A model generated the notes under the pieces. The model was given only the letters and a program-made list of their open reading frames with translations, made no database searches and was not told the origin of the DNA. The position numbers were made by a program, and so were the translations under genes. A stretch of 63,834 bases of DNA, filler included, from Octopus bimaculoides (Eukaryota): NCBI RefSeq assembly GCF_001194135.2. It is 5 parts of 5 records of this genome, joined end to end, with 100 filler letters (N's around TTAATTAATTAA, not from the genome) between each part and the next. Parts side by side here need not be neighbours in the genome. Positions count along the whole stretch, not along the records: positions 38,807 to 54,895 come from NC_069000.1; 4 more parts are not named here. One strand, given 5' to 3'. Positions 38,807 to 55,070 of the stretch are shown here, piece after piece (within the stretch, counting starts at the first letter, position 1; each line of letters opens with the position of its first letter).

Positions 38807-38839
<33 letters not shown>

Positions 38840-38916
38840 TCGTCGGTAAAACATAAATCCGAAAAAGAAGCTCACTCTAAGTTATAGAGCAGTATATATT
38901 AAAGTTAGATAAGGCC

Positions 38917-38989
38917 GGTTTACGGGATTACCTTAGGTTTCACGTCAATAAAGGGCTTACCTTTACGGTGCATCATCAGATCCCAAACC
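38917..38989 (-). ncRNA. Type I hammerhead ribozyme motif (candidate)
   Basis: Minus strand reads GGUUU GGGAU CUGAUGA UGCACCG UAAAGG UAAGC CCUUUA UUGACGU GAAA CC UAA GG UA^AUCCC GU AAACC. Full core (CUGANGA, GAAA, UH), 10-bp stem I with a GU bulge, 3-bp stem III, 6-bp inner stem II. The base of stem II is irregular. Confidence 0.7.
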
Positions 38990-39404
38990 TGCTTGGTTGA
39001 CGGAAACTTTGTGGAAACCACTCCGAAGGGCTGTTGATCATCATCATCATCATCGTGTCGTCGTCTTTATGTCCACTTGACTCATGCGTGCATGGGTCAG
39101 ACGGAGCTTGTTGAGGCGGATTTTTTTTCTATGGCCGAATGCCCCTCCTGCTGCCAACCTAACCCCATCGTTTCTTTGTAAGCTAAAACTTCCTCATTAC
39201 GAAACATGTCTTGAGGGTTGACTGGAAACGGAGGACACCGCTTGCATGACGGTGACTGTCGTTTACAACTATCACGCGATGTCATGGCAAGGAGACAGTA
39301 ACGCAGGCACAAAATACGTACGCATACATATACACACATACATATGTACATACATATGTACATACATATATATCCACATACATATGTACAGAAACGTTAT
39401 TTCG

Positions 39405-39640
39405 CCGGGCGAAATGCTTAGCGGTATTTCGTCTGCCGCTACGCTCTGAGTTCAAATTCCGCCGAGGTCGACTTTGCCTTTCATCCTTTCGGGGTCGATT
39501 AAATAAGTACCAGTTACGCACTGGGGTCGATTAAATAAGTACCAGTTACGCACTGGGGTCGATATAATCGACTTAATCCGTTTGTCTGTCTTTGTTTGTC
39601 CCCTCTGTGTGTAGCCCCTTGTGGGTAGTAAAGAAATAAA
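39405..39640 (+). mobile_element. Young SINE A with an internal 32-bp duplication
   Basis: Same tail as the 35135 copy. ggggtcgattaaataagtaccagttacgcact is repeated at 39491 and 39523. Confidence 0.9.
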
Positions 39641-39953
39641 ATACATATGTACATACATATATACATATATACATATATACATACATGCCCCAGCATGGCC
39701 ACAGTCTTAGGGTTGAAACATAAAAGAATAAAAGAATATGTATACACCCAGAACCACGCTAATAACTTAGGAGTGAAATTTAGGATTTCTCAGTACTCAT
39801 GGCTCCGGGTTCAGTCCCACTGCGTGGCACCCTGGGCAAATGTCTTCTACTATNNNNNNNNNNNNNNNNNNNNNNNNNNNNNNNNNNNNNNNNNNNNNNN
39901 NNNNNNNNNNNNNNNNNNNNNNNNNNNNNNNNNNNNNNNNNNNNNNNNNNNNN

Positions 39954-39994
<41 letters not shown>

Positions 39995-40208
39995 TTGTAT
40001 ATAACTATGCATACACACACACATATACACTCATTCAAATATCTATATATACAAATGTGACCGCCCATTCCTCGCGCACACTTATACAAATGTAAAAAAA
40101 TTGTGTTTATTGCTCGCTGCTACAACTAAACATGAACATACGTAATTACTTTCAAGTTCCATATAAGTAACTCTCAGATTTCGTCCTCTAAGAAACGATC
40201 CAATTTAC

Positions 40209-40259
40209 GTTTAAACCGATAGATTTAACTGAGGAATGCTTTCGTTTTGCGTTGGGCAT
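40209..40259 (-). CDS. NOP6: Nop6-like protein, probable first coding exon
   Basis: caacATG context, MPNAKRKHSSVKSIGLN, phase-0 gtaaat donor, CpG-rich surroundings. Completes a 762-nt CDS. It lies across an artificial scaffold linker from the other exons. Confidence 0.55.
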
Positions 40260-40432
40260 GTTGAATTAAAGCGAAATCTCTCCAGTTAACACGAAATCTA
40301 CAAAAACAATTGATTCTACTCTGTAAGTCTCTCTACAAATAAATGTTCTGCTGTATATAGATAGTTACATTTACTGTAGAGTGTAAAACGTCATGTAAGG
40401 CACACAAACACACCACTGTCCATACACATATG

Positions 40433-41784
40433 CACTGATTCCTCGACTATCGCCGGTGTTACGTTCCAAAACCACCCGCGATAGGCGAAACTCCGCGAAG
40501 TAGAAACTGTACTGTATATTTTTTTAATAATTTTTATAATGTATATATATTTATTATATTATAAATGCACCCCCTCGCGATAGGCGAAAATCCGCGAAGT
40601 AGAAGCAGTATATTTTTGAAATAATTTTTATAATTTGTATATATTTATTATATTATAAATGCACCCCCCACCGCGATAGGTGAAAATTCGCGAAGTAGAA
40701 ACAGTACTGTACAGTATATTTTTTAAATAACTTTTATAATGTATATATATTTATTATATTGTAAATGCAAACCTCCCGCGATAGGTGAAAATCCGCGATG
40801 TAGAAACAGTACAGTTCTGTATATTTTAAGAATAATTTTTATAATTTGTATATATTTATTACATTAAAAATGCATCCCTCGCGATAGGTGAACATCCGCG
40901 ATGTAGAAACAGTACAGTTCTGTATATTTTTTAAATAATTTTTATAATTTGTATATATTTATTATATTAAAAATGCACCACCCCACTCTCGCGATAGGTG
41001 CAAATCCGCGAAGTAGAAACAGTACTGTACTGTATATTTTTTTAATAATTTTTATAATTTGTATATATTTATTATATTATAAATGTAAAGCCCCCACGAT
41101 GGGTGAAAATCCGCGAAGTAGAAACAGTATTTTACTGTATATTTTTTTAATAATTCTTATAATTTGTATATATTTATTACATTAAAAATGCATCCCTCGC
41201 GATAGGTGAACATCCGCGATGTAGAAACAGTACAGTTCTGTATATTTTTAAAATAATTTTTATAATTTGTATATATTTATTATATTAAAAATGCACCACC
41301 CCACTCTCGCAATAGGTGCAAATCCGCGAAGTAGAAACAGTACTGTACTGTATATTTTTAAAATAATTTTTATAATTTGTATATATTTATTATATTGTAA
41401 ATGCATCCCCCGTGATAGGAGAAAGTCCGCGAAGTAGAAACAGTACTGTACAGTATATTTTTTTAATAATTTTTATAATGTATATATATTTATTATATTG
41501 TAAATGCAACCCCCCCGCGATGTAGAAACAGTACTGTACTGTATATTTTTTTAATAATTTTTATAATTTGTATATATTTATTATATTATAGATGTAAACC
41601 ACCCGTGGTAGGTGAAAATCCGCGATGTAGAAACAGTACTGTACTGTATATTTTTTTAAATAATTTTTATAATTTGCATATATTTATTATATTATAAATG
41701 CAAAACAACTTCAAAGAGGAATCGACGTAAGCTTAAATAATTAACCGCGATAGGTGAACCGCGATATGGCGATGGATTACTGTA
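40433..41784. mobile_element. Tigger/pogo-like MITE with an internally amplified tandem array
   Basis: Ends cactgattcctcgactatcgccgg and ccgcgatatggcgatggattactg|ta are imperfect inverted repeats. A cleaner 5' end of the same family (tagtaatccctcgactatcgcg) is at 45326. Confidence 0.7.
40476..41705. repeat. Minisatellite, 12 units of about 90-110 bp
   Basis: Unit approximately ccgcgataggtgaaaatccgcgaagtagaaacagtactgtactgtatattttttaaataatttttataatttgtatatatttattatattataaatgcacc, counted by hand. Confidence 0.95.
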
Positions 41785-41887
41785 CACATATATACGCATA
41801 CATACACACATGCACATATACGCATGTGTATATGTAATATGATTATATATATGGGTGTAATATAATTGTATATGTGCATATGTGTGT

Positions 41888-41926
<39 letters not shown>

Positions 41927-43568
41927 AGTATTTGTGTTCCACCACCACCACCACCATCACCACCTGTCAATCGGGGTTGTTTTGTTTACGTCCCCTGTTA
42001 GCTAGCGGTTGGCATAAGTGATCAATGGAATAAGTACAAAGTTTCAATAAACCCTTTAAGGTGGTGCTCCAGCGTGGCCGCAGTCCAGTGAGTCAAACAA
42101 GTATAAAAGATACATACACAGATGCGCGCACACACACATAATCACTGCTCGACAACCGGTGTTGGTNNNNNNNNNNNNNNNNNNNNNNNNNNNNNNNNNN
42201 NNNNNNNNNNNNNNNNNNNNNNNNNNNNNNNNNNNNNNNNNNNNNNNNNNNNNNNNNNNNNNNNNNNNNNNNNNNNNNNNNNNNNNNNNNNNNNNNNNNN
42301 NNNNNNNNNNNNNNNNNNNNNNNNNNNNNNNNNNNNNNNNNNNNNNNNNNNNNNNNNNNNNNNNNNNNNNNNNNNNNNNNNNNNNNNNNNNNNNNNNNNN
42401 NNNNNNNNNNNNNNNNNNNNNNNNNNNNNNNNNNNNNNNNNNNNNNNNNNNNNNNNNNNNNNNNNNNNNNNNNNNNNNNNNNNNNNNNNNNNNNNNNNNN
42501 NNNNNNNNNNNNNNNNNNNNNNNNNNNNNNNNNNNNNNNNNNNNNNNNNNNNNNNNNNNNNNNNNNNNNNNNNNNNNNNNNNNNNNNNNNNNNNNNNNNN
42601 NNNNNNNNNNNNNNNNNNNNNNNNNNNNNNNNNNNNNNNNNNNNNNNNNNNNNNNNNNNNNNNNNNNNNNNNNNNNNNNNNNNNNNNNNNNNNNNNNNNN
42701 NNNNNNNNNNNNNNNNNNNNNNNNNNNNNNNNNNNNNNNNNNNNNNNNNNNNNNNNNNNNNNNNNNNNNNNNNNNNNNNNNNNNNNNNNNNNNNNNNNNN
42801 NNNNNNNNNNNNNNNNNNNNNNNNNNNNNNNNNNNNNNNNNNNNNNNNNNNNNNNNNNNNNNNNNNNNNNNNNNNNNNNNNNNNNNNNNNNNNNNNNNNN
42901 NNNNNNNNNNNNNNNNNNNNNNNNNNNNNNNNNNNNNNNNNNNNNNNNNNNNNNNNNNNNNNNNNNNNNNNNNNNNNNNNNNNNNNNNNNNNNNNNNNNN
43001 NNNNNNNNNNNNNNNNNNNNNNNNNNNNNNNNNNNNNNNNNNNNNNNNNNNNNNNNNNNNNNNNNNNNNNNNNNNNNNNNNNNNNNNNNNNNNNNNNNNN
43101 NNNNNNNNNNNNNNNNNNNNNTATATATATATATATGGTATGAAGTTTGCTTTGCAGTCATGATTTCCCTGGATTGATCTTGTTGCTTGTCATTTTGAGC
43201 AAGTGTCGTTTTATATAACTTCGAGTTGGTCCAAATCTTGTACATGAAGTTGAATTGTGGGAAACTGAATAGAAGCCCGCCGGGTGGATTGTATCTGCAA
43301 TTCAAAAGTACAACCTTGTCACAAATTGTGTCACGCTGTGTCACGCAGTGTCACGCTGGTTTCGTGTGAGAAGTGCTTTCAAGATACAAACGACAATAGA
43401 ATCACCGGCCTCTTGTATGTTAACGTGTTAATTCAACGTGCCTGGAGGTTCAGCTGGTTCACTGATCAATTGAACACTCACAACTGGAAATCATGACCGA
43501 GATCGATCCTCCACCCCCACATATACAGACACACGCAACACACATCCATCCATCCATCCATCCATCCA

Positions 43569-44105
43569 TTGGGATAGAGAAGAGAAACTGTGCACAGTTG
43601 TTGGAAATTAGCTGCCCAGAGGATGTTAACATAAGGCTGAAAATCAGTGAAAAAGAGAACACCTATGCTGAACTATTGAGAAATCTGCAGTTACTCCAGT
43701 TCAGGTTTATACCTGTAATAATTGGAGCCCTGAGATATGTAACACACTGCCGAAATACCAATCTTGAGAAATTAGGCTTCTCAAAACCAGAAAGGAGAAA
43801 GCTAATTCGAAGACAACATATCCAATCCATCACTGGAACTGTAAAGATCTGTAAAACTTTCCAGAAGTTTATCATTTAAATATATATGAGCATGTCTAGA
43901 TATGCAACTATATGCACATGCATAAAACATACAAATCTGCACATGCATACATACATACATGCATACATACATACATACATACATACACACATACATACAT
44001 ACATACCCTGTTGTTGATGTTGAAATTCCAGTGTAGGAGCCTTGGATCTTGGTTAGAAACCGGTTCTTTCTCTATTGGCAAGAAATCTTGAAATAAACTG
44101 AATAA
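43569..44105 (+). mobile_element. 3' end of an RLE-type LINE with (CATA)n in and after the 3' UTR
   Basis: LLEISCPEDVNIRLKISEKENTYAELLRNL...FIPVIIGALRYV...SITGTVKICKTF is an RLE C-terminus. Starts right after (CATC)n. Confidence 0.8.
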
Positions 44106-44328
44106 CCATACATACATACACACACACATACATACATACATGCATACATACATATTTAATATACGCAATTAGAAAAGTGCTACTAATAGTTTCATGCTTT
44201 AAGATACAAAAAATTGACAGATTTATATAACATGCCATGTATCTCCAAGTAATCATTCAGGTTTAGTTCATACGTTAAATGTATTTAAAATGAATGTGAG
44301 TGCGCGCGTGTGTGTATGTGTTTGTGTG

Positions 44329-44370
<42 letters not shown>

Positions 44371-44538
44371 AGAGTGTATATATATATATATATATCATAT
44401 TCATGCGTAGATACATACATATCTACACACGCACACACACAAACAAACACATAGATGTACGTGCATCTCTCTCTGTATAAATATATAGAAACGTTTGACC
44501 TCAGACTTCCAGCTGAAACGGGTAAAGTTTAAAAGAGG

Positions 44539-44601
<63 letters not shown>

Positions 44602-44611
44602 AACACACACA

Positions 44612-44666
<55 letters not shown>

Positions 44667-45101
44667 ACATGCCTATATTATCCACGTATACATGGAGATA
44701 TGTTATACAAAGTCAAATTTACACAGCTATTGTATACATTTCCTCTTCCTAATTAGCCTAAACAAACGCAGTAAATCGATGCGTTTCAAACAGAGCCACA
44801 CGACAAGACCTTTCGTGCAATATTAATAAAAATGCTTTAGCCCTCCGTTCCTCTATGAATGAGAAAACAGAATACAATTTGCTTTCATATGATTCTGCTT
44901 TGCGTGATGTGGTTTTCGATAAGTTTAAAATGAAGGTTAAAACCATTTCAATTTTATTAAACATGACAATTATTTGACTTGCCGTTTTCAATCCTCACCT
45001 CTACCCTGTCCTATGAAAATCGTTTTGTATATATTTTATTCACCCGAACAATAGAAATTAAGTGGAAATAAAGACATAACATTCAGTGCACATTGGATGT
45101 G

Positions 45102-45147
<46 letters not shown>

Positions 45148-45287
45148 TCTGTCTGCCTGTCTGATTGCCTATGTATGTATGTATGTATGTATGTATGTAT
45201 GTATGTATGTATGTATGTATGTATGTATCTATCTTGTTTGTTATTGTAAATTTGATTTCTCTCTCTCTCTCTCTCTCTCTATGTATG

Positions 45288-45330
<43 letters not shown>

Positions 45331-46327
45331 ATCCCTCGACTATCGCGAGTGTTNNNNNNNNNNNNNNNNNNNNNNNNNNNNNNNNNNNNNNNNNNNNNNN
45401 NNNNNNNNNNNNNNNNNNNNNNNNNNNNNNNNNNNNNNNNNNNNNNNNNNNNNNNNNNNNNNNNNNNNNNNNNNNNNNNNNNNNNNNNNNNNNNNNNNNN
45501 NNNNNNNNNNNNNNNNNNNNNNNNNNNNNNNNNNNNNNNNNNNNNNNNNNNNNNNNNNNNNNNNNNNNNNNNNNNNNNNNNNNNNNNNNNNNNNNNNNNN
45601 NNNNNNNNNNNNNNNNNNNNNNNNNNNNNNNNNNNNNNNNNNNNNNNNNNNNNNNNNNNNNNNNNNNNNNNNNNNNNNNNNNNNNNNNNNNNNNNNNNNN
45701 NNNNNNNNNNNNNNNNNNNNNNNNNNNNNNNNNNNNNNNNNNNNNNNNNNNNNNNNNNNNNAAAAAGTATTGGGGCTGATCTGTTCGACTAAAATCCTTC
45801 AAGATGGTGCCCCAGCATGGCCGCAGTCCAATGACTTCAACAAGAAAACGGTAAAAAGTTAAAAGGTGATATAGTCTGATGGTTAGCTTTGCTATCCAAA
45901 CCATTCACTACAACATCCGCCGCTAATGAATGGTGTCAATTAATTGTGAATTAGCAGAATTATTACAAAAACCCTATGAAATACTTTGCCATACTCGTTT
46001 ATTCTTTATCTCTTTTAGTTTAAAAAAAAAAAAAAAAATCGAGGAATGAGGGTTTGGTGATTCTTATTGTTCTATATTCGAAAATATTTGATTGCAGTCA
46101 AGAATTGGGTCAATTGAAGCGATTTGCAATGTCTTTCAAAATATAATGTCTTGATGATAAACTTAGAAAGTAAATATTTACAATATTTCACACGTTTTAT
46201 TATAACAAAAAATTCAGTTTGTACTTTAAATACACACACATACATACATACACACATACACTCAAGAATTCAATTAACTTGTAACATTAATTGGATTTTA
46301 TGAATTATACCTACATATAATTTAGAA

Positions 46328-46370
<43 letters not shown>

Positions 46371-46399
46371 AAATTGATTAATCGATTCATTGCTAGATG

Positions 46400-46431
<32 letters not shown>

Positions 46432-47234
46432 NNNNNNNNNNNNNNNNNNNNNNNNNNNNNNNNNNNNNNNNNNNNNNNNNNNNNNNNNNNNNNNNNNNNN
46501 NNNNNNNNNNNNNNNNNNNNNNNNNNNNNNNNNNNNNNNNNNNNNNNNNNNNNNNNNNNNNNNNNNNNNNNNNNNNNNNNNNNNNNNNNNNNNNNNNNNN
46601 NNNNNNNNNNNNNNNNNNNNNNNNNNNNNNNNNNNNNNNNNNNNNNNNNNNNNNNNNNNNNNNNNNNNNNNNNNNNNNNNNNNNNNNNNNNNNNNNNNNN
46701 NNNNNNNNNNNNNNNNNNNNNNNNNNNNNNNNNNNNNNNNNNNNNNNNNNNNNNNNNNNNNNNNNNNNNNNNNNNNNNNNNNNNNNNNNNNNNNNNNNNN
46801 NNNNNNNNNNNNNNNNNNNNNNNNNNNNNNNNNNNNNNNNNNNNNNNNNNNNNNNNNNNNNNNNNNNNNNNNNNNNNNNNNNNNNNNNNNNNNNNNNNNN
46901 NNNNNNNNNNNNNNNNNNNNNNNNNNNNNNNNNNNNNNNNNNNNNNNNNNNNNNNNNNNNNNNNNNNNNNNNNNNNNNNNNNNNNNNNNNNNNNNNNNNN
47001 NNNNNNNNNNNNNNNNNNNNNNNNNNNNNNNNNNTACAGGGCTGTATTACTGGCGTACTGATGGTTTACTCCAAGTTCAAGAGAATTCTCTGCATTCTAA
47101 TTCAGTTGGTAAAATGCCTATAAATGAAAAGTCGTATCATGAACTATTGCAATTAAAAAAAAAAAAAAACTACAACAAAAAACTCTGTGTTATCTTCTTT
47201 AGACTTTCGTCTTGTTCCCCTGCCTGCTTTTACG

Positions 47235-47720
47235 AAGCACATTTGGTGTGATATTTCTACTGGTAATAAACGACCTTCTTTCTCTGCTTGTCAGACACAG
47301 ACGCTCAGTTTTTCTGCTCTTCACAATTTATCTCAGCCAGTTGTTGCAGCATCGGCAAAACTTATTTCAGCTCGTCTCATTTGGCCAAATATGACCAGAG
47401 AGTTTTGTCAATGGGCTACTAATTGTACATCTTGTCACAAAACAAAAGTTCATCACCGTAGTAAAGCTTCCCGAGGAACTCTCGCAGCACTAGATATTAC
47501 TGGACCCCTATCTCCTGTTCGGGTCTATACCAGCTATTGCTAGATCCTTATCTCCTGTTTAAAATCTATACCAGATATTGCTGGATCCTTATCTCCTGTT
47601 CATGTCTATATCTATCTGTTTACCCGTATGGAACGTTTTTGTAGACGGCCTGAAGACGTTCTTATTAGAGATATTTTATCTGCTACTGTAGCGGTAGTGT
47701 TGATGAATATCATGAAAGTA
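47235..47720 (+). mobile_element. Gypsy/Ty3 integrase relic
   Basis: IWCDISTGNKRP...ALHNLSQP...SARLIWPNM...WATNCTSCHKTKVHH...DITGPLSP...YLFTRMERFCRRPE: decayed HHCC region plus the start of the core. Confidence 0.8.
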
Positions 47721-48749
47721 GTGCAAGGAATTTAAAGCCCGGCATATAACTGATGTATATTACTAGACACTACACATTAAGGGAGGACTTTTTTTTATCG
47801 AGTACGACAGAAGCGTGTTGCATAAGAAAAGTGAAAGTGGGGACGAGAAACTAATTCGCTACGACGAGTAACATAGATTCCCTCACCCCTCATGCGGATT
47901 AGAATCTCGCTGGTCTAAGGTTGAATTTGTCAGCTTTTATAATTGTACACTCGATTCTAGAATCTTCAGCCAAATTGCTTAGCAGGAGAACTCGCTGTGT
48001 AACTTTGAAGTTTGCAGCAACAACAACTATAATAAATTACTCCTGAACTCATGAGTCACGGAGAAAATGTCTTGCTGTAGACAAATAGGTGTAAATATAA
48101 ACAGTCAGTTCGAAGCGCCCCCTACCCAAAACTGATGGATGCATGAGTTCAGGAGTAATGCATGAATCCATCTTCAGTATCAAACACTGGAAGGAGGCAC
48201 TACGGACTGACAAGAGATAGATCTTTCTTGTTATATTCCAGTCAGTGTACTGTGACTGATGGCGCTAATCAGTGGCTCGACCGTAATAAAATACGGAATG
48301 TAAGCGCTAAGCAGTGATGTATACATATATAAACTCGTTACCATAATATATAATATATTTAAATTTACAACCAAGGTAAATATAATATATTTAAATATAA
48401 TATATTTAAATTTACAACCAAGGTAGTCTGCTACCGCTTTTATTGGCAATGTTTTTTTTTCAAGCACAATACTAAGGGTGTCTGTATATAAATAGGTAAA
48501 TTTGGTGTTGTGTGCGAATGTATGGTTACATTGGCTGTACTTGCAACAATACAAGCCACTTCTTTTTTTTTTAATCTCTATCGATACCGATTGTCTCTTT
48601 TTTTTACCATGGGCGTCGATAACAAAATATTAAGGTGTGCCTGTAAAATACAATGAGGTCCGATATCGGTGCATGCAGGGGTTTCTGCCTTGCATCGTTG
48701 AGACCACGTAGTGTCCGTTGGAACATTAATTTTATATTTGCTGTCTGGG

Positions 48750-49260
48750 CAGTAATTTCGGTAACTCAAACATTTTATTTTTTGGAATTTTATGAATTTT
48801 TTCCCCCAAATTTGTGTTCTACACACGGAAATTCATACAATTATGAAAAAAAAAAAAAAAAAAAGCAACAACACTTTTTTTACTCCCGCAAGCCAATAAA
48901 TCCTAAAAATTCCACTCTTTTCCGATGCGAGTTTAAAATACGGACAGGACGAATTATTTTGCTCAAATCCCATGAATGGATCACTCTTGGATGCTTCATC
49001 ATTCTATTAAATGTGTTTATGGGGAGAAAAGTATTGAAAAACATCAATACATGTCAGAGTGACAATGTAACGAGGAAGATATCAGGTGGTCGTGAGTTGT
49101 GCTAAAAATAACAACTAAATTGCCCTTAAATCACTCAAACACACACTATATATATATTTTTTGCATAATCATATCAATTCTCGTGTGTAGAACACAAATT
49201 CGCAAAAAAAAAAATTTCTGAAAATTCCCAAAGATAAAAAAGTTACGAGTTATATGGGAT
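48750..49260. mobile_element. Element with about 100-bp inverted arms
   Basis: 48750-48850 (ttttggaattt...aaatttgtgttctacacacgg...aattatgaaaaa) is reverse-complementary to 49155-49255. Outer ends not resolved. Confidence 0.55.
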
Positions 49261-49934
49261 GCTTAAACCAGAATTCCGCCAAATATTTGATTAATCACCG
49301 ACACTAAAATACATTTATTCGTCTCTGTCGACCCAACGACTTATTAGAAACTACGGACGACTGAATACAAAATTGGCTAACAAACATTTCAAGTTCTGTA
49401 TAGAATTGCAATGTCGACTCAAACGGAATTTAAGTGTAATAGACTGGAGTGGAGCTAAAACTACGGCTGGCATATAACGTCCGATAGTCGGCCATTCTTA
49501 TCACATAATTTTGTTGCTGTTGTTGTTTTGTGATAGTCGAATTTAGACATTTAACCGAGAACGATACCCACACATAATAGCGTAATGTTTATGGCATATA
49601 TTATTATTGTGTAATCAAAATACGTTGGTCATCAGTTTTAAACCATTATCGTATTTCATGTTATGATCATAAACAATCGCCGTTGTCTTATTTTTTATTT
49701 TTTCGTTACTTTTTATTTGGTAATTTATCAACATTTCGTTCATCACATGCGCAGTAGAAGAACTATATACATAAAACACACACATACAAACACACACACA
49801 CAATTTATTTAGCTTATTGTGACTTACTGATTGCGTATATACTTGAATGTATGCATACTTGTACGTTTATGTATATAAATATATGTATGTATACATGTCC
49901 ATGTTTATGAACATATACATACGGATATATACTC

Positions 49935-49989
<55 letters not shown>

Positions 49990-52165
49990 NNNNNNNNNNN
50001 NNNNNNNNNNNNNNNNNNNNNNNNNNNNNNNNNNNNNNNNNNNNNNNNNNNNNNNNNNNNNNNNNNNNNNNNNNNNNNNNNNNNNNNNNNNNNNNNNNNN
50101 NNNNNNNNNNNNNNNNNNNNNNNNNNNNNNNNNNNNNNNNNNNNNNNNNNNNNNNNNNNNNNNNNNNNNNNNNNNNNNNNNNNNNNNNNNNNNNNNNNNN
50201 NNNNNNNNNNNNNNNNNNNNNNNNNNNNNNNNNNNNNNNNNNNNNNNNNNNNNNNNNNNNNNNNNNNNNNNNNNNNNNNNNNNNNNNNNNNNNNNNNNNN
50301 NNNNNNNNNNNNNNNNNNNNNNNNNNNNNNNNNNNNNNNNNNNNNNNNNNNNNNNNNNNNNNNNNNNNNNNNNNNNNNNNNNNNNNNNNNNNNNNNNNNN
50401 NNNNNNNNNNNNNNNNNNNNNNNNNNNNNNNNNNNNNNNNNNNNNNNNNNNNNNNNNNNNNNNNNNNNNNNNNNNNNNNNNNNNNNNNNNNNNNNNNNNN
50501 NNNNNNNNNNNNNNNNNNNNNNNNNNNNNNNNNNNNNNNNNNNNNNNNNNNNNNNNNNNNNNNNNNNNNNNNNNNNNNNNNNNNNNNNNNNNNNNNNNNN
50601 NNNNNNNNNNNNNNNNNNNNNNNNNNNNNNNNNNNNNNNNNNNNNNNNNNNNNNNNNNNNNNNNNNNNNNNNNNNNNNNNNNNNNNNNNNNNNNNNNNNN
50701 NNNNNNNNNNNNNNNNNNNNNNNNNNNNNNNNNNNNNNNNNNNNNNNNNNNNNNNNNNNNNNNNNNNNNNNNNNNNNNNNNNNNNNCTGAGTACCTAATT
50801 TTTTTCTATAACATAATTCCTGTATAACCTTCCAATATATCATTATATATCATATAAAGAGACGGCATCGCAAGGTGAAATCAAAAAATCTGAAAATCCT
50901 ACACGATTAGGTGAAAAGCGCTTAAAATGATTTATAAAACATGATGTGACATATTAATAAAAATCTGTAAATGTACAACCATCCAGATATCTGAGTACCT
51001 AATTTTTTTCTATAACATAATTCCTGTATAACCTTCCAATATATCATTATATATATGTATGTATACGCATGTTTGGTTTATGTAAATTTAAATAAGTGCT
51101 GGAGCGCTACAATTTGTACACTGAAGTCAGAAGATCGTACTTCGAAGGAGTTCAGAAATTTGTACTTTTTTTTAAATGAATAAATACTTGTCCGAAAATA
51201 GTCTCAAAACTTCTGAAATGCGTCTTGTGTACATATTCTTTTATTCTTTTACTTGTTTCAATCATTTGTCTACAGCCATGCTGGAGCAGCGCTTTGAAGG
51301 GATTTTAGTCGAACAAATCGATCCCAGGACTTATTTTTAAAGCCTAGTACTTATTCTATCGTCTCTATTGCCGAACCGCTAAGTTACGAGGGGTGTAAAC
51401 AATCCAACACCAATTGTCAAGCGGTGAGATTCAATACAGTTTCTAGTTTCCAGATATCCAATACCACTCATAAGTTATAGGGCGAATCGAGGTTACCAAA
51501 AATGACATTCACTCAAAGTGCTACGACTTGGGATCGAGCCACAAGATGCAAAGTGAACTTCTGTACCATTCGGCTATGCTCTTTCCCTCCCTCCTTCTCT
51601 CCCTTCCCTCCTCTCTCTCTCCACCTCTCTGCCTCACACACATACACACAAATGATCGTGTTCCACTATTCGATGCGGTTGCACAGTGAAGCTGGTGTAA
51701 TTAAAATTTTTATAACAACAATTAAGTTGAAGAAATAGCTTGCACCGATTTAGAACTTTGCTCGGCGGTCCTCAATTATAATCGCATTCTTCAAACAACG
51801 CACACACTCGCCAATGTAATGACTATGCCTATGTGAGTGTTGTTGTGCGTGTCATGTGTGTGTATGTGTGTGTGTATGTGTGTGTGTATGTGTGTGTGTT
51901 CAGTATGTGTGTTTTCTATTGTATGTTTATGTGCAGTTCTTCAATCTAGATCCGTGCGGCTTTTTGTTTTTAGTTTATATTAGCTGTTAAACTACGCGAT
52001 ATGGGTAGGGGCACAGAGGCCACACGGTAACACGTAAGGGGCCCCGTACCATTTATTTGTGTATGGCGTCCGGTCAGGCCTTCATTTCCTCCTGTCAGAT
52101 TTTCTTGTTCAACATTTTTTTATATCTAAGTGCACACTGCTTGTATCAATCAATCAGTAAACTTC

Positions 52166-52226
<61 letters not shown>

Positions 52227-53829
52227 GCACAGGTGAATATATGTGTGTGTTTGTCTATATATATATATGCACATATCCATATAGATTGGTCCATAACACA
52301 TATATGTACATATACACACATAGACACATATATGTTATGTATATATGTATATATACAACCCATACCAGCATGGACAACGGACGTTAAATGATGCCGATGA
52401 TTCATATATGTATATTTAGAATTNNNNNNNNNNNNNNNNNNNNNNNNNNNNNNNNNNNNNNNNNNNNNNNNNNNNNNNNNNNNNNNNNNNNNNNNNNNNN
52501 NNNNNNNNNNNNNNNNNNNNNNNNNNNNNNNNNNNNNNNNNNNNNNNNNNNNNNNNNNNNNNNNNNNNNNNNNNNNNNNNNNNNNNNNNNNNNNNNNNNN
52601 NNNNNNNNNNNNNNNNNNNNNNNNNNNNNNNNNNNNNNNNNNNNNNNNNNNNNNNNNNNNNNNNNNNNNNNNNNNNNNNNNNNNNNNNNNNNNNNNNNNN
52701 NNNNNNNNNNNNNNNNNNNNNNNNNNNNNNNNNNNNNNNNNNNNNNNNNNNNNNNNNNNNNNNNNNNNNNNNNNNNNNNNNNNNNNNNNNNNNNNNNNNN
52801 NNNNNNNNNNNNNNNNNNNNNNNNNNNNNNNNNNNNNNNNNNNNNNNNNNNNNNNNNNNNNNNNNNNNNNNNNNNNNNNNNNNNNNNNNNNNNNNNNNNN
52901 NNNNNNNNNNNNNNNNNNNNNNNNNNNNNNNNNNNNNNNNNNNNNNNNNNNNNNNNNNNNNNNNNNNNNNNNNNNNNNNNNNNNNNNNNNNNNNNNNNNN
53001 NNNNNNNNNNNNNNNNNNNNNNTATATATATATATATATATGCCGAACTGCTAAGTTACGGGGGTGTTAATACACCAGCATCGGTTGTCTAGCGATGGTG
53101 GCGGAGGGGACAAACACAGACACACAAACAGTCAAATGGCTGAAACAGGCAAAAGAATAAAATAAAAGGCTAATATACATACGCATGTATATATTACACA
53201 CACACACACACGGAATTAACACTCACTCACATATAACTGTATAAGCGTAATTATATACATATACACTCTATTTTGAATCCACCATAAACGCAAATACATT
53301 TAAGCACTGTATTATATCTACCCCTCTACGTTAATAACTACACAACTACTTCCTGCGAATCCCTATACCGCTCTATACCCAACCCTTACATCTAATCCGC
53401 ATTCATACTCACATGCGCTTGCATATATACACACACACCTTTCTACATCCACTTACCTTTGGCGTGATTGCTCTCTTGTTAAAAGACAACTTGATATCAA
53501 AGAAAGCACACCTTCCCAACATGTGAGTTTGACGCCTTTGTATATGCGTGGACATACACTGCGTTACATATGCATATACATACGTGCTCGTTTCTCCACC
53601 AACGCTCTGCCTCGCCTCCCACCAACGCACTTCCTTGTTCCCCACCAACGTTTCCCCTGCGATAAATGCCGCCCTCTCCCCTGTCTCCTGGCTCTTCTAT
53701 GCCACCCTTGGTCTGAACAGCCACCTCAGGCACCCGGCACCCTTCGTAACCATCAAGCCGAAGAGACTCAATTACTACTCAGATACGAGTTAACGCCGCC
53801 GACACACACACATACATATATATATATAT

Positions 53830-54221
53830 CTTTTACTTGTGTCAGTTATTTGACTGCCGCCATGGTGGAGCACCGCCTTTAGTCGAGCAAATCGACCCCG
53901 GGACTTATTCTTTGTAAGCCTAGTACTTATTCTATCGGTCTCTTCTGTCGAACCGCTAGATGATGGAGACATAGACACACCAGCATCGGTTGTCAAGCAA
54001 TGAGAGGGGGGACAAACACAGACACACAAACATACACACACATATATATACATATATACGACGGAAGTCTTTCAGTTTCCGTCTACCAAATCCATTCACA
54101 AGGCTTTGGTTGGCCCGAGGCTATAGTAGAAGACACTTGCCCAAGGTGCCACGCAGTGGGACTGAACCCGGAAACATGTGGTTCGTAAGCAAGCTACTTA
54201 CTACACAGCCACTCCTGCGCC
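53830..54221 (-). mobile_element. SINE B, full length
   Basis: Complete reverse copy from ggcgcaggagtggctgtgt to acaagtaaaag. Further partial copies at about 7640-7835, 38415-38660, 41950-42112, 45760-45860, 51240-51430, 53040-53165 and 54255-54515. Confidence 0.9.
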
Positions 54222-54564
54222 TATATATGTAGATGCATGGTTATGCGTTATATCAAAAGAAGCTTGCCTTCCAACCACGCGGTTCTGGGTTCAGTCCCAC
54301 TGCGTGGCACCTTTGGCATTTGTTTTCTACTATAGCCTCCGGCCTACCAAATATTTGTAAGTGCATTTGGTAAACGGAAATGGAAACTGAAACGAAAACT
54401 GAAAGAGTGACTGTGTGGTAAGAAACTTGCTTCCCAAGTGTCTTCTACTATAGCCTCGGGCCGAACAAAGCCTTGTGAGTGGATTTGGTCGACCGAAACT
54501 GAAAGAAGCCCAATATCTTTAATCAATACACGGTGATCGCGTATAAGCTTTAAGCTTATAAAAT

Positions 54565-54604
<40 letters not shown>

Positions 54605-55070
54605 AACAAATATATATACACAAAAATACATATATAAACGATATCTAAATCTATATATACATAAGGTTCCGAGGTACAGCCTTGAGTCTCGTGGTATATT
54701 CAGCTGGGCTCTTGTGATCGTACATGCAACTGGAATTTTAATCCGTTTGTACTTCGGTATGTGTGTATATATTACTCTAATCCTGTTTTGTACACGGTGG
54801 CTATTTCTCTGATCCGAACTTGGTGCTTTACTATTTAGGTACCTGATCCACTTGAACTCATATATGTATAATATATATATATATATATATATATANNNNN
54901 NNNNNNNNNNNNNNNNNNNNNNNNNNNNNNNNNNNNNNNTTAATTAATTAANNNNNNNNNNNNNNNNNNNNNNNNNNNNNNNNNNNNNNNNNNNNTATGT
55001 ATGTATGTATGAATTATGTATGTGTATATACCTTTGTATATATGTTTATATGCCTATGTATGTTTGTATG

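What the first reader, a model, noticed from the sequence alone, without database searches (positions are those of the whole stretch)
38917..38989. Type I hammerhead ribozyme in sense orientation in intron 1 of the Nop6-like gene
Seen: on the minus strand every conserved core position is present in order (C3 U4 G5 A6 U7 G8 A9; G12 A13 A14 A15.1; U16.1 A17). Stem I is GGUUU-GGGAU / AUCCC-(GU bulge)-AAACC, stem III is ACC-UAA-GGU, and the inner stem II is UAAAGG/CCUUUA. The predicted cut is between 38929 and 38928. Known: short-stem-III type I hammerheads occur in Penelope-like elements and retrozymes and can cleave as dimers; ACCU-A-AGGU here is near-palindromic, which fits that mode. Inference: since it lies on the transcribed strand, it could cut the pre-mRNA co-transcriptionally. 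Caveat: the base of stem II pairs only if an extra U is bulged (G.U, then C-G), so it may be a decayed relic.
Basis: partly seen in the sequence, partly recalled or inferred. Interest (0 to 1): 0.85.

Follow-up and report, generated by a model that had tools for sequence, protein, structure and literature searches.

The report
Lone, eroded hammerhead ribozyme motif in octopus DNA
A 73-base stretch of octopus-like DNA has every hallmark base of a self-cutting hammerhead RNA, but one of its three stems no longer closes on the core, so it is most likely a worn, solitary copy left by a Penelope-like mobile element, which is an ordinary find and not a proven gene-regulating ribozyme.

Summary
The motif is in the sequence exactly as described, on the minus strand at 38989-38917. 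All core bases are present in order. Helix I has 5+5 bp with a GU bulge, helix III is ACC/UAA/GGU, helix II has an inner UAAAGG/CCUUUA hairpin, and the cut site is 38929|38928.

It is the only such arrangement in the piece, where about 5e-4 are expected by chance. At that minimal level roughly 100 would occur in a whole octopus-sized genome. Rfam gives no hammerhead hit even at E<=10, but control phage hammerheads reach only 25-30 bits on that narrow model. My own type I model ranks the candidate first in the piece (15.3 bits, E about 0.003) while skipping helix II entirely. A published RNAMotif score rejects it (-5 against a cut-off of -7).

The "extra U" after A9, the long helix II and the short palindromic helix III are published hallmarks of hammerheads from Penelope-like elements, which are abundant in octopus. 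Three transitions would restore a perfect fold.

Best reading, about 0.5: a solitary, mildly decayed transposon-type hammerhead that is probably weak or dead. Chance look-alike: about 0.3. The intron / Nop6 context cannot be supported from this piece. No homologues could be retrieved.

The parts
38980..38989 (-). Helix I, 5' strand (GGUUUGGGAU). The 5 bp next to the core plus 5 distal bp pair with 38917-38928.
   Evidence: all 10 pairs are standard; ensemble probability 0.38-0.98 in the isolated 73-mer
38973..38979 (-). Core strand C3 U4 G5 A6 U7 G8 A9 (CUGAUGA)
   Evidence: One of 6 CUGANGA sites in the piece (3.3 expected), and the only one followed by the full arrangement.
38972..38972 (-). 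Unpaired U between A9 and G10.1
   Evidence: Allowed by the published RNAMotif descriptor ('one base allowed after core') and described as conserved in hammerheads of Penelope-like elements.
38942..38971 (-). Helix II region, 30 nt. From the core outward: G.U, C-G, A.C, C.A, C-G, G.U, a bulged U (38948), then UAAAGG/CCUUUA (38965-38960 / 38954-38949) closed by loop UAAGC (38959-38955).
   Evidence: 12 layers (8 Watson-Crick, 2 G.U, 2 A.C) plus 1 bulge. The base pairs G19.U48 and C20-G47 have only 0.035 probability. The inner hairpin is above 0.94.
38939..38941 (-). Core G12 A13 A14
   Evidence: In the predicted ensemble G12 is mostly sequestered in a competing CAC/GUG helix (P about 0.7).
38930..38938 (-). 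Helix III: A15.1-U16.1, C-G, C-G with loop UAA (ACCUAAGGU). It is self-complementary at 8 of 9 positions.
   Evidence: P about 0.2. The dimer fold is predicted more stable than two monomers (-39.4 vs -31.4 kcal/mol).
38928..38929 (-). Predicted scissile bond: after A17 (38929), before A1.1 (38928)
   Evidence: Position follows from the hammerhead numbering applied. Cleavage itself was not tested.
38917..38928 (-). Helix I, 3' strand (AUCCC-GU-AAACC) with a 2-nt GU bulge
38997..39007 (-). Upstream GUUUCCGUCAA, which can pair with UUGACGUGAAAC (38948-38937) and so mask the GAAA core in the longer transcript
   Evidence: in the 211-nt context fold, helices I and III and the base of helix II drop to about 0 probability, while the inner helix II hairpin stays at about 0.6. 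inverted repeat I1.
38841..39036 (-). About 196-nt unit carrying the motif, bounded by a (GAT)6 SINE tail upstream (39037-39054) and (TG)n downstream (38807-38837, running to the piece edge). It is single-copy within the piece.

Best explanation
This is a solitary type I hammerhead motif of the kind carried by Penelope-like elements (PLEs) and their non-autonomous derivatives (retrozymes). It lies on the minus strand and is slightly decayed.

If transcribed, the RNA could form the three-way junction. By the established hammerhead mechanism, G12 (38941) would act as general base on the 2'-OH of A17 (38929) and G8 as general acid. That would cut between 38929 and 38928 and leave a 2',3'-cyclic phosphate and a 5'-OH.

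In the present sequence the base of helix II barely forms: G.U, then C-G, then two A.C mismatches. G12 and the GAAA strand are predicted to be tied up in alternative helices. The short helix III would need a second copy for the dimeric mode, and none is nearby. The copy is therefore probably catalytically weak or dead and has no demonstrated host function.

Shown: the motif, its rarity within the piece, its failure on the published score and on Rfam, and the three-transition distance from a perfect fold. Inferred: the transposon origin, the decay scenario and the loss of activity.
For: - All core positions and all three helices are present in the right order.
- It is the only hit of the published type I pattern in the piece, with about 5e-4 expected by chance.
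- It is the top hit of a type I covariance model built from 105 phage hammerheads: 15.3 bits, E about 0.003, filters off. The best score elsewhere in the piece is 11.9 bits, and the best in 20 kb of Octopus vulgaris DNA is 9.7 bits.
- Published PLE hallmarks that the authors say were not built into their search descriptor are seen here (PMC4209133): a nucleotide between 9 and 10.1 and a palindromic helix III. The candidate also shares the architecture they describe: an enlarged helix II, with a mid-helix bulge as in D. virilis, and a helix I of about 5 bp next to the core.
- That paper says most such motifs occur as single elements from truncated PLEs, with low activity.
- Both mismatches in helix II are A.C, the type produced by transitions. 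Reverting three transitions (38969 A>G, 38945 A>G, 38942 U>C) makes the hammerhead fold the MFE at -25.1 kcal/mol with helix II at P = 1.0.
- A random region closes as well as this helix II (12 layers) with P about 6e-4 (statistic chosen post hoc).
- The piece is octopus-like: a TE ORF is 86% identical to an O. vulgaris protein.
- PLEs are a major and partly recently active TE order in octopus (PMC13282606; PMC8967140).
- The giant squid genome has 235 Rfam Hammerhead_1 loci (PMC6962438).
Against: - No Rfam hammerhead hit even at E<=10 in a 96-nt scan.
- My own model aligns helix I, both core strands and helix III but skips helix II completely. Real members score 20-73 bits.
- The published RNAMotif score rejects it: -5 against a cut-off of -7, while all 92 control hammerheads pass.
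- The published curation rules reject mispairs next to the core.
- G10.1-C11.1, described as highly conserved in PLE hammerheads, is G.U here.
- There is no second copy, no tandem arrangement and no reverse-transcriptase or GIY-YIG remnant in the piece.
- No homologous copy could be retrieved from any collection, so there is no covariation evidence.
- Folding energy is no better than shuffles (z = -0.64).
- The piece shows no CpG depletion (o/e 0.96). The fact that two of the three transitions sit at CpG-derived dinucleotides therefore carries no special weight.
Confidence: 0.5

Rival explanations
1. Chance look-alike. An imperfect inverted repeat (GGTTTGGGAT ... ATCCCGTAAACC) happens to enclose CTGATGA, an unrelated small hairpin and GAAA. 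CTGATGA is possibly a fragment of the GAT-type microsatellite that is common here. The sequence was never a ribozyme.
For: - The hammerhead consensus is simple, and look-alikes are expected in large databases (Perreault et al. 2011).
- At the minimal-pattern level about 100 chance hits are expected per 2.7 Gb genome. The model E-value of 0.003 per 16 kb scales to hundreds per genome.
- Helix II does not close on the core without an inserted base, a wobble pair and a 2x2 internal loop.
- No Rfam hit, and the published score rejects it.
- No stability excess over shuffles.
- Competing folds dominate.
- No other copy was found anywhere.
- A weaker chance pairing of CUGAUGA with GAAAC is visible in unrelated octopus DNA (L001 10491-10540, 8.1 bits).
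Against: - Once the second half of helix I and the helix II hairpin are credited, the Markov-null expectation is only about 0.03-0.3 per genome, although those criteria are post hoc.
- The deviations from the canonical hammerhead coincide with published PLE-type hallmarks.
- Both helix II mismatches are of the transition type.
- The candidate scores 3-6 bits above everything else in 36 kb of real octopus sequence.
Confidence: 0.3
2. One reading: an active type I hammerhead, working as a monomer or through helix III dimerisation, that lies on the transcribed strand of a host gene intron and cuts the pre-mRNA co-transcriptionally. This would be analogous to the domesticated intronic hammerheads of amniotes.
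For: - The core is intact.
- A 2-bp helix II and one extra base after A9 are admitted by the published descriptor.
- A U.U mismatch at 10.1-11.1 still supports some activity in natural hammerheads, so a G.U there need not be fatal.
- Helix III is near-palindromic, and a dimer is predicted to be more stable than two monomers.
- Intronic sense-strand type I hammerheads are known in amniotes (PMC6155905).
Against: - No exon or gene is detectable in the piece, and the downstream side of the supposed intron lies outside it.
- No partner copy is available for dimerisation.
- The helix II base is populated at 3.5%, G12 is sequestered at about 0.7, and the GAAA strand is masked by an upstream complement in the longer transcript.
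- PLE-type hammerheads cleave poorly even as dimers.
- There is no HH9 or HH10 similarity.
- There is no conservation evidence of any kind.
Confidence: 0.1

Closest known systems
Hammerheads of Penelope-like elements (min-HHR and D. virilis-type variants; Cervera & de la Pena 2014, PMC4209133; Lunse et al. 2017, as cited in PMC6765202)
   Same: - Type I topology.
- An unpaired nucleotide between A9 and G10.1.
- Helix II longer than the canonical 4 bp, with a mid-helix bulge as in D. virilis.
- Helix I of about 5 bp next to the core, followed by an irregular region.
- A short, near-palindromic helix III suited to dimer formation.
- Occurrence as an isolated copy in an invertebrate genome rich in PLEs.
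   Different: - 11.1 is U, not the highly conserved C.
- There are two A.C mismatches in helix II.
- Helix II spans 12 layers, longer than the 6-8 bp described.
- No PLTR, reverse-transcriptase or GIY-YIG context and no second copy are visible in the piece.
- No family of related copies is available to show covariation.
Canonical metazoan type I hammerheads (Schistosoma Sm-alpha, newt satellite 2, non-LTR retrozymes; Rfam RF00163)
   Same: Core sequence, type I topology, helix I with an internal irregularity about 5-6 bp from the core, and a short helix III (invertebrate retrozymes have 2 bp plus a tetraloop).
   Different: - No match to RF00163 at E<=10.
- No GUCC/GGAC 4-bp helix II with a 6-nt loop, so the loop 1-loop 2 tertiary contact cannot be placed.
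- Not in a 170-400 bp tandem repeat.
Amniote intronic hammerheads HH9/HH10 (RECK, CTCL/C10orf118)
   Same: The proposed situation is the same: a single type I motif on the sense strand of an intron.
   Different: Those are ultraconserved across species and match their own Rfam families. Here there is no Rfam hit, no demonstrable gene and no conservation data.
Viroid hammerheads with an extra residue after A9 (CChMVd plus strand; De la Pena & Flores 2001, as cited in PMC4209133; further details from my own memory)
   Same: One extra nucleotide between A9 and G10.1 is compatible with an active core.
   Different: Those are type III, sit in a replicating circular RNA, and have an intact G10.1-C11.1 pair and a closed helix II.

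Membership tests
Hammerhead ribozyme, type I (general) | Conserved core: C3 U4 G5 A6 N7 G8 A9, G12 A13 A14, A15.1-U16.1, H17 | tested here: met
   CUGAUGA at 38979-38973, GAA at 38941-38939, A15.1 at 38938 paired with U16.1 at 38930, A17 at 38929
Hammerhead ribozyme, type I (general) | Three helices abutting the core, with pairs at 1.1-2.1, 10.1-11.1 and 15.1-16.1 | tested here: inconclusive
   1.1-2.1 (A-U) and 15.1-16.1 (A-U) are present. 10.1-11.1 exists only as G.U after skipping one U, and is followed by one C-G and a 2x2 A.C loop. Ensemble probability is 0.035. Perreault et al. reject mispairs adjacent to the core.
Hammerhead ribozyme, type I (general) | Passes the published RNAMotif type I descriptor and its score (Perreault et al. 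2011, Text S1) | tested here: not met
   The structural pattern matches, but total_bonus is -5 against the required <= -7. All 92 control phage type I hammerheads score -7 to -13.
Hammerhead ribozyme, type I (general) | Rfam RF00163 score at or above gathering (34 bits) | tested here: not met
   No hit at gathering or at E<=10, even in a 96-nt scan. Control: bona fide phage type I hammerheads reach only 25-30 bits, are missed at gathering, and are seen in E-value mode. The test is therefore narrow.
Hammerhead ribozyme, type I (general) | Significant match to an independent type I covariance model | tested here: inconclusive
   Model R2 (105 phage type I hammerheads), filters off: 15.3 bits, E about 0.003 for the piece, top hit, but helix II is skipped as a local gap. 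Members score 20-73 bits. The noise maximum is 11.9 bits in the piece and 9.7 bits in L001.
Hammerhead ribozyme, type I (general) | Site-specific self-cleavage 3' of H17 | not testable with these tools
   Needs in vitro transcription or RNA end mapping.
Hammerhead ribozyme, type I (general) | Compensatory changes in helices I-III among homologues | not testable with these tools
   No homologue was found: none in the piece, none by protein-space searches, none by pattern scans of three collections. No cephalopod genome collection was available.
PLE-type hammerhead (Cervera & de la Pena 2014) | [quoted passage not shown] | tested here: met
   U at 38972; feature as described
PLE-type hammerhead (Cervera & de la Pena 2014) | Highly conserved G10.1-C11.1 pair | tested here: not met
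   G10.1 (38971) faces U (38942). One transition away from G-C.
PLE-type hammerhead (Cervera & de la Pena 2014) | Enlarged helix II (6-8 bp, sometimes with a mid-helix bulge) | tested here: inconclusive
   12 layers with 8 Watson-Crick, 2 G.U and 2 A.C pairs and one bulged U. Only the distal 6 bp are stable as the sequence stands.
PLE-type hammerhead (Cervera & de la Pena 2014) | Short helix III with palindromic 15.2-16.2 and loop 3 | tested here: met
   ACCUAAGGU is self-complementary at 8 of 9 positions.
PLE-type hammerhead (Cervera & de la Pena 2014) | Location in a PLTR flanking a reverse-transcriptase/GIY-YIG ORF, or near a second copy | tested here: not met
   No RT or endonuclease remnant and no second motif within 38807-54895. 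Only 110 nt are available on the downstream side, so a downstream element cannot be excluded. The paper notes that most copies are solitary.
Metazoan non-LTR retrozyme | Tandem repeats of about 170-400 bp, each carrying a type I hammerhead | tested here: not met
   The unit is single-copy in the piece. The only long tandem array (40469-41704, period about 103-106) carries no hammerhead.
Amniote-type domesticated intronic hammerhead (HH9/HH10) | Sense-strand position in an intron of a conserved gene, with cross-species conservation | not testable with these tools
   No exon is detectable in the piece. There is no orthologous locus: L001 is not syntenic. There is no HH9 or HH10 hit.

The most novel reading that the evidence does not exclude
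A cephalopod-specific, still active hammerhead variant. It would have a nucleotide inserted after A9, a G.U at 10.1-11.1 and an unusually long, interrupted helix II. It would sit on the sense strand of a host transcript and be used, perhaps through conditional folding against the upstream GUUUCCGUCAA masking sequence, to cleave that pre-mRNA co-transcriptionally.
Probability: 0.07. Interest if true: 0.55.

Novelty: new member of a known kind. Interest (0 to 1): 0.25.

Why it matters
If real, this is one more transposon-borne type I hammerhead in a genome where such motifs are already expected. Penelope-like elements are a major octopus repeat class, and the giant squid has 235 Rfam hammerhead loci. 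It adds little on its own.

It would matter only if the copy were active and sat in a host intron. That would extend the amniote phenomenon of domesticated intronic hammerheads to molluscs. Nothing in this piece supports that.

Two methodological points are of wider use for the scan:
- Rfam RF00163 at its gathering score misses even textbook type I hammerheads (25-30 bits against 34). A negative there is weak evidence.
- An "extra base after A9" should be read as a hallmark of Penelope-like-element hammerheads, not as a flaw.

Tried and rejected
1. Rfam at gathering, at E<=10 on 594 nt, and at E<=10 on 96 nt gave no hammerhead hit. The hits reported were low-complexity miRNA-like matches at 39302-39400 and chance CRISPR-DR51 and SNORD41 matches over the motif.

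2. Looking for other copies:
- blastn within the piece found microsatellite matches only.
- Translating the frames across the motif and searching the 5.8-billion-protein index found nothing.
- Exact-ORF look-ups for four window ORFs were not on record.
- Gapped DNA pattern scans of metagenome, GTDB genome and viral collections found nothing.
- None of these collections is a cephalopod genome, so absence says little.

3. The exhaustive HMMER search with the 48-aa translation returned four cyanobacterial-type WD40-repeat proteins (E down to 1e-17). I rejected these. The match is the short WDL..GKPF word summed over 5-8 repeats per protein, each stretch is insignificant alone, and the frame has no other WD40 features.

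4. The O. vulgaris locus L001, reached through a TE-ORF homologue, is not syntenic. It shares only dispersed repeats at 69-93% identity, so there is no orthologue of the motif.

5. CpG-decay argument for the helix II transitions: dropped, because the piece has CpG o/e 0.96.

6. An 11-nt direct repeat inside the motif (GGGATTACCTT / GGGCTTACCTT) is probably chance.

7. Search for the 'Nop6-like' gene: six-frame segments of 40 aa or more, with Pfam on the 20 best, gave only Integrase_H2C2.

8. tRNA-like SINE heads: ARAGORN found none.

Full report
**What is there**

On the minus strand, 38989..38917 reads:

GGUUUGGGAU CUGAUGA U GCACCGUAAAGG UAAGC CCUUUAUUGACGU GAAA CC UAA GG U A | AUCCC GU AAACC

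- Core strands: CUGAUGA at 38979-38973, and GAA plus A15.1 at 38941-38938.
- U16.1 at 38930 and A17 at 38929.
- Helix I: ten pairs interrupted by a GU bulge.
- Helix III: A-U, C-G, C-G with loop UAA.
- Helix II: an inner UAAAGG/CCUUUA hairpin.
- The predicted scissile bond, 38929|38928, is placed correctly.

Helix II reaches the core only if the U at 38972 is left unpaired. The layers from the core outward are then G.U, C-G, A.C, C.A, C-G, G.U, a bulged U, and the six-pair hairpin.

**Context**

- The piece (38807-54895) is draft eukaryotic sequence with 36% G+C, six N gaps and many microsatellites and SINE-like repeats.
- A transposon-derived ORF at 43466-43876 is 86% identical, over 39% of its length, to a hypothetical protein of Octopus vulgaris. 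Several repeats match a 20-kb O. vulgaris locus at 69-93% identity. A cephalopod, probably octopod, origin is therefore supported.
- The motif sits in a stretch of about 196 nt (38841-39036). That stretch lies between the (GAT)6 tail of a SINE-like element upstream and a (TG)n run that continues to the edge of the piece.
- Only 110 nt are available downstream of the motif.
- I found no coding exon anywhere in the piece. Among six-frame segments, the only Pfam match above cut-off is an integrase zinc-binding remnant at 47157-47540.
- 'Intron 1 of a Nop6-like gene' therefore has no support here. Any downstream exon would lie in unrelated sequence outside the piece.

**Is it more than chance?**

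- I wrote a descriptor that turned out to be equivalent to the published RNAMotif type I pattern of Perreault et al. 2011. It allows 0-1 base after CUGANGA, helix II of at least 2 bp including wobble pairs, and helix III of at least 3 bp. I required helix I of at least 5 bp.
- The candidate is the only match in the piece. It is the only one of six CUGANGA sites with the full arrangement.
- Under a strand-symmetric dinucleotide (Markov-1) model there were no matches in 40 Mb.
- A conditional simulation gave P(match | core) = 1.5e-4 and a core frequency of 1.3e-4. That is 1.9e-8 per position per strand.
- This corresponds to about 5e-4 expected in the piece and about 100 in a 2.7 Gb genome. The genome size is the giant squid figure, which I take as typical for octopus from my own knowledge.
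- Crediting the stability of the helix II hairpin (factor 0.027) and the distal five pairs of helix I (factor 0.11) lowers the genome-wide expectation to about 0.3.
- Using the 12-layer helix II statistic instead (P = 6e-4) lowers it to about 0.03.
- These refinements were chosen after seeing the sequence. Real genomes also contain more inverted repeats than a Markov model produces. The refined figures are therefore optimistic.

**Covariance models**

- Rfam 15 gives no hammerhead match at gathering. It gives none at E<=10 in 594 nt or in 96 nt.
- A positive control shows how far this negative can be trusted. Phage contigs fetched by pattern contain textbook type I hammerheads. Rfam at gathering reports none of them.
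- In E-value mode those controls score 25-30 bits against RF00163, whose gathering score is 34. RF00163 is a 45-position model with a fixed GUCC/GGAC helix II.
- So the candidate's failure is real, but it is expected for anything with a divergent helix II.
- I then built a type I model from 13, and then from 105, structurally aligned phage hammerheads. I ran it with filters off.
- The candidate is the top hit in the piece at 15.3 bits, with a rough E of 0.003. The next best score in the piece is 11.9 bits. The best in 20 kb of O. vulgaris DNA is 9.7 bits.
- The alignment matches helix I, both core strands, helix III and U16.1, but treats the whole of helix II as a local gap. Family members score 20-73 bits.
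- Scaled to a genome, E = 0.003 per 16 kb means hundreds of equally good hits. This agrees with the descriptor estimate.

**Published acceptance criteria**

- Under the score attached to the 'typical type I' RNAMotif descriptor the candidate earns -5. It is rejected at the -7 cut-off.
- All 92 control hammerheads pass with scores of -7 to -13.
- The same paper's curation rules reject mispairing adjacent to the core and multiple mispairs in short stems. [quoted passage not shown]

**Folding**

- The 73-mer is no more stable than its shuffles: MFE -15.7 kcal/mol, z = -0.64.
- The hammerhead secondary structure is 2.3 kcal/mol above the MFE. The two pairs that close helix II on the core have probability 0.035, and helix III has 0.2.
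- A competing CAC/GUG helix that sequesters G12 has probability of about 0.7.
- In a 211-nt context, an upstream GUUUCCGUCAA (39007-38997) pairs with UUGACGUGAAAC (38948-38937). It masks the GAAA strand, and helix I falls to about 0.
- Two copies are predicted to dimerise more stably than two monomers fold (-39.4 vs -31.4 kcal/mol), but no second copy exists in the piece.

**What changed my reading**

Cervera and de la Pena 2014 (PMC4209133) describe the hammerheads of Penelope-like elements (PLEs) as follows:
- Helix II is larger than usual, at 6-8 bp. In D. virilis it has a bulged nucleotide in its middle.
- Helix I is short, at 4-5 bp.
- Helix III is short and palindromic.
- G10.1-C11.1 is highly conserved.
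- Sequences within a genome are extremely variable.
- Self-cleavage in vitro is low, even as dimers.
- They occur mostly as single elements from truncated PLEs.

The candidate's 'defect', the extra U, is thus a family hallmark, and its long helix II and palindromic helix III also fit. What does not fit is U at 11.1 and the two A.C mismatches.

All three deviations are one transition away from pairing. Reverting 38969 A>G, 38945 A>G and 38942 U>C makes the hammerhead fold the MFE at -25.1 kcal/mol, with helix II fully closed.

PLEs are one of the six TE orders annotated in O. vulgaris. They underwent an expansion about 56 My ago, and 31 families are recently active (PMC13282606). They are among the abundant ancient coleoid repeats (PMC8967140). 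The giant squid genome carries 235 Rfam Hammerhead_1 loci (PMC6962438).

Transposon-borne hammerheads should therefore greatly outnumber chance motifs of this quality in such a genome.

**Verdict**

- About 0.5: a solitary PLE- or retrozyme-type type I hammerhead copy whose helix II base has eroded. It is probably weak or inactive and has no shown host role.
- About 0.3: a chance look-alike. The simplicity of the motif, the failure of every formal membership score and the complete lack of comparative data keep this alive.
It has nothing in its favour within this piece beyond the intact core.

I do not file the motif as a confirmed member of any hammerhead family. Two defining tests were not met and the decisive ones could not be run.

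**Limits**

- No cephalopod genome collection was available, so copy number, covariation, orthology and the true flank below 38807 could not be examined.
- The E-values from my models are rough because of the shortened calibration.
- The null model ignores repeat structure.
- The helix II statistics are post hoc.

Noticed in passing
window 39037-39170 (minus strand): SINE-like element ending in a (GAT)6 tail directly upstream of the motif-bearing unit. From memory it resembles the abundant octopus repeat ending '...CATGGAAAACGGACGTTAAACGATGATGAT'. I did not test this against a repeat library.
   Followed up: no
window 39282-39750: Two to three adjacent copies of another SINE-like repeat (translations repeat 'RNWYLFNRP' and 'QCVTGTYLIDP'). 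They match O. vulgaris locus L001 at 75-79% identity. A 32-nt unit is repeated 2.3 times at 39491-39563.
   Followed up: partly
window 40469-41704: Satellite-like tandem array, period about 103-106 nt (also scored at 213 and 318), about 10.5 copies, 80-87% matches. It carries no hammerhead-like motif above 5.8 bits.
   Followed up: partly
window 47157-47540 (+): Remnant of an LTR-retrotransposon integrase: Pfam Integrase_H2C2, 27.4 bits, E 3.6e-6. This is the only Pfam hit above cut-off in the piece.
   Followed up: partly
window 43466-43876 (+); L001 10001-10575: Transposon-derived ORF with an 86%-identical hypothetical protein in Octopus vulgaris (P0002). The DNA aligns at 80% over 474 nt to a non-syntenic O. 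vulgaris locus.
   Followed up: partly
window 53823-54525 and 39798-39853: Several copies, in both orientations, of a repeat that recurs many times in L001 at 69-92% identity. Translations repeat 'QSHCVAP' and 'IVEDTCPRCHAVGLNPE'. It is presumably the common octopus tRNA-derived SINE, although ARAGORN finds no tRNA-like head.
   Followed up: no
whole piece versus L001: CpG observed/expected is 0.96 in this piece but 0.28 in the 20-kb O. vulgaris locus L001, which lies next to an LSM-domain gene. GpC is about 1.0 in both. This may reflect unmethylated versus methylated compartments. It is unexplained.
   Followed up: no
window 39302-39400: Sub-threshold Rfam matches to mir-297, mir-3149, mir-1277 and others (up to 48.9 bits against gathering scores of 75-100) fall on a TATG/TACA low-complexity palindromic run. 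They are compositional artefacts.
   Followed up: partly
L001 10491-10540 (+): A partial hammerhead look-alike in O. vulgaris transposon sequence: CUGAUGA, 21 nt, GAAAC, then a poor helix III and helix I (8.1 bits). It illustrates the chance background.
   Followed up: partly
loci L002-L121 (IMG/VR viral contigs), e.g. L063 2403-3095, L046 852-1661, L100, L076, L087: Phage contigs carry clusters of 3-7 canonical type I hammerheads a few hundred nt apart. They score 50-73 bits on my model but only 25-30 bits on Rfam RF00163, below its gathering score.
   Followed up: partly
window 38923-39066 (minus-strand frame): The 48-aa translation across the motif gives a repeat-summed HMMER match to WD40-repeat proteins through the word WDL..GKPF (E 1e-17 over 8 repeats). 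I judged this spurious.
   Followed up: yes
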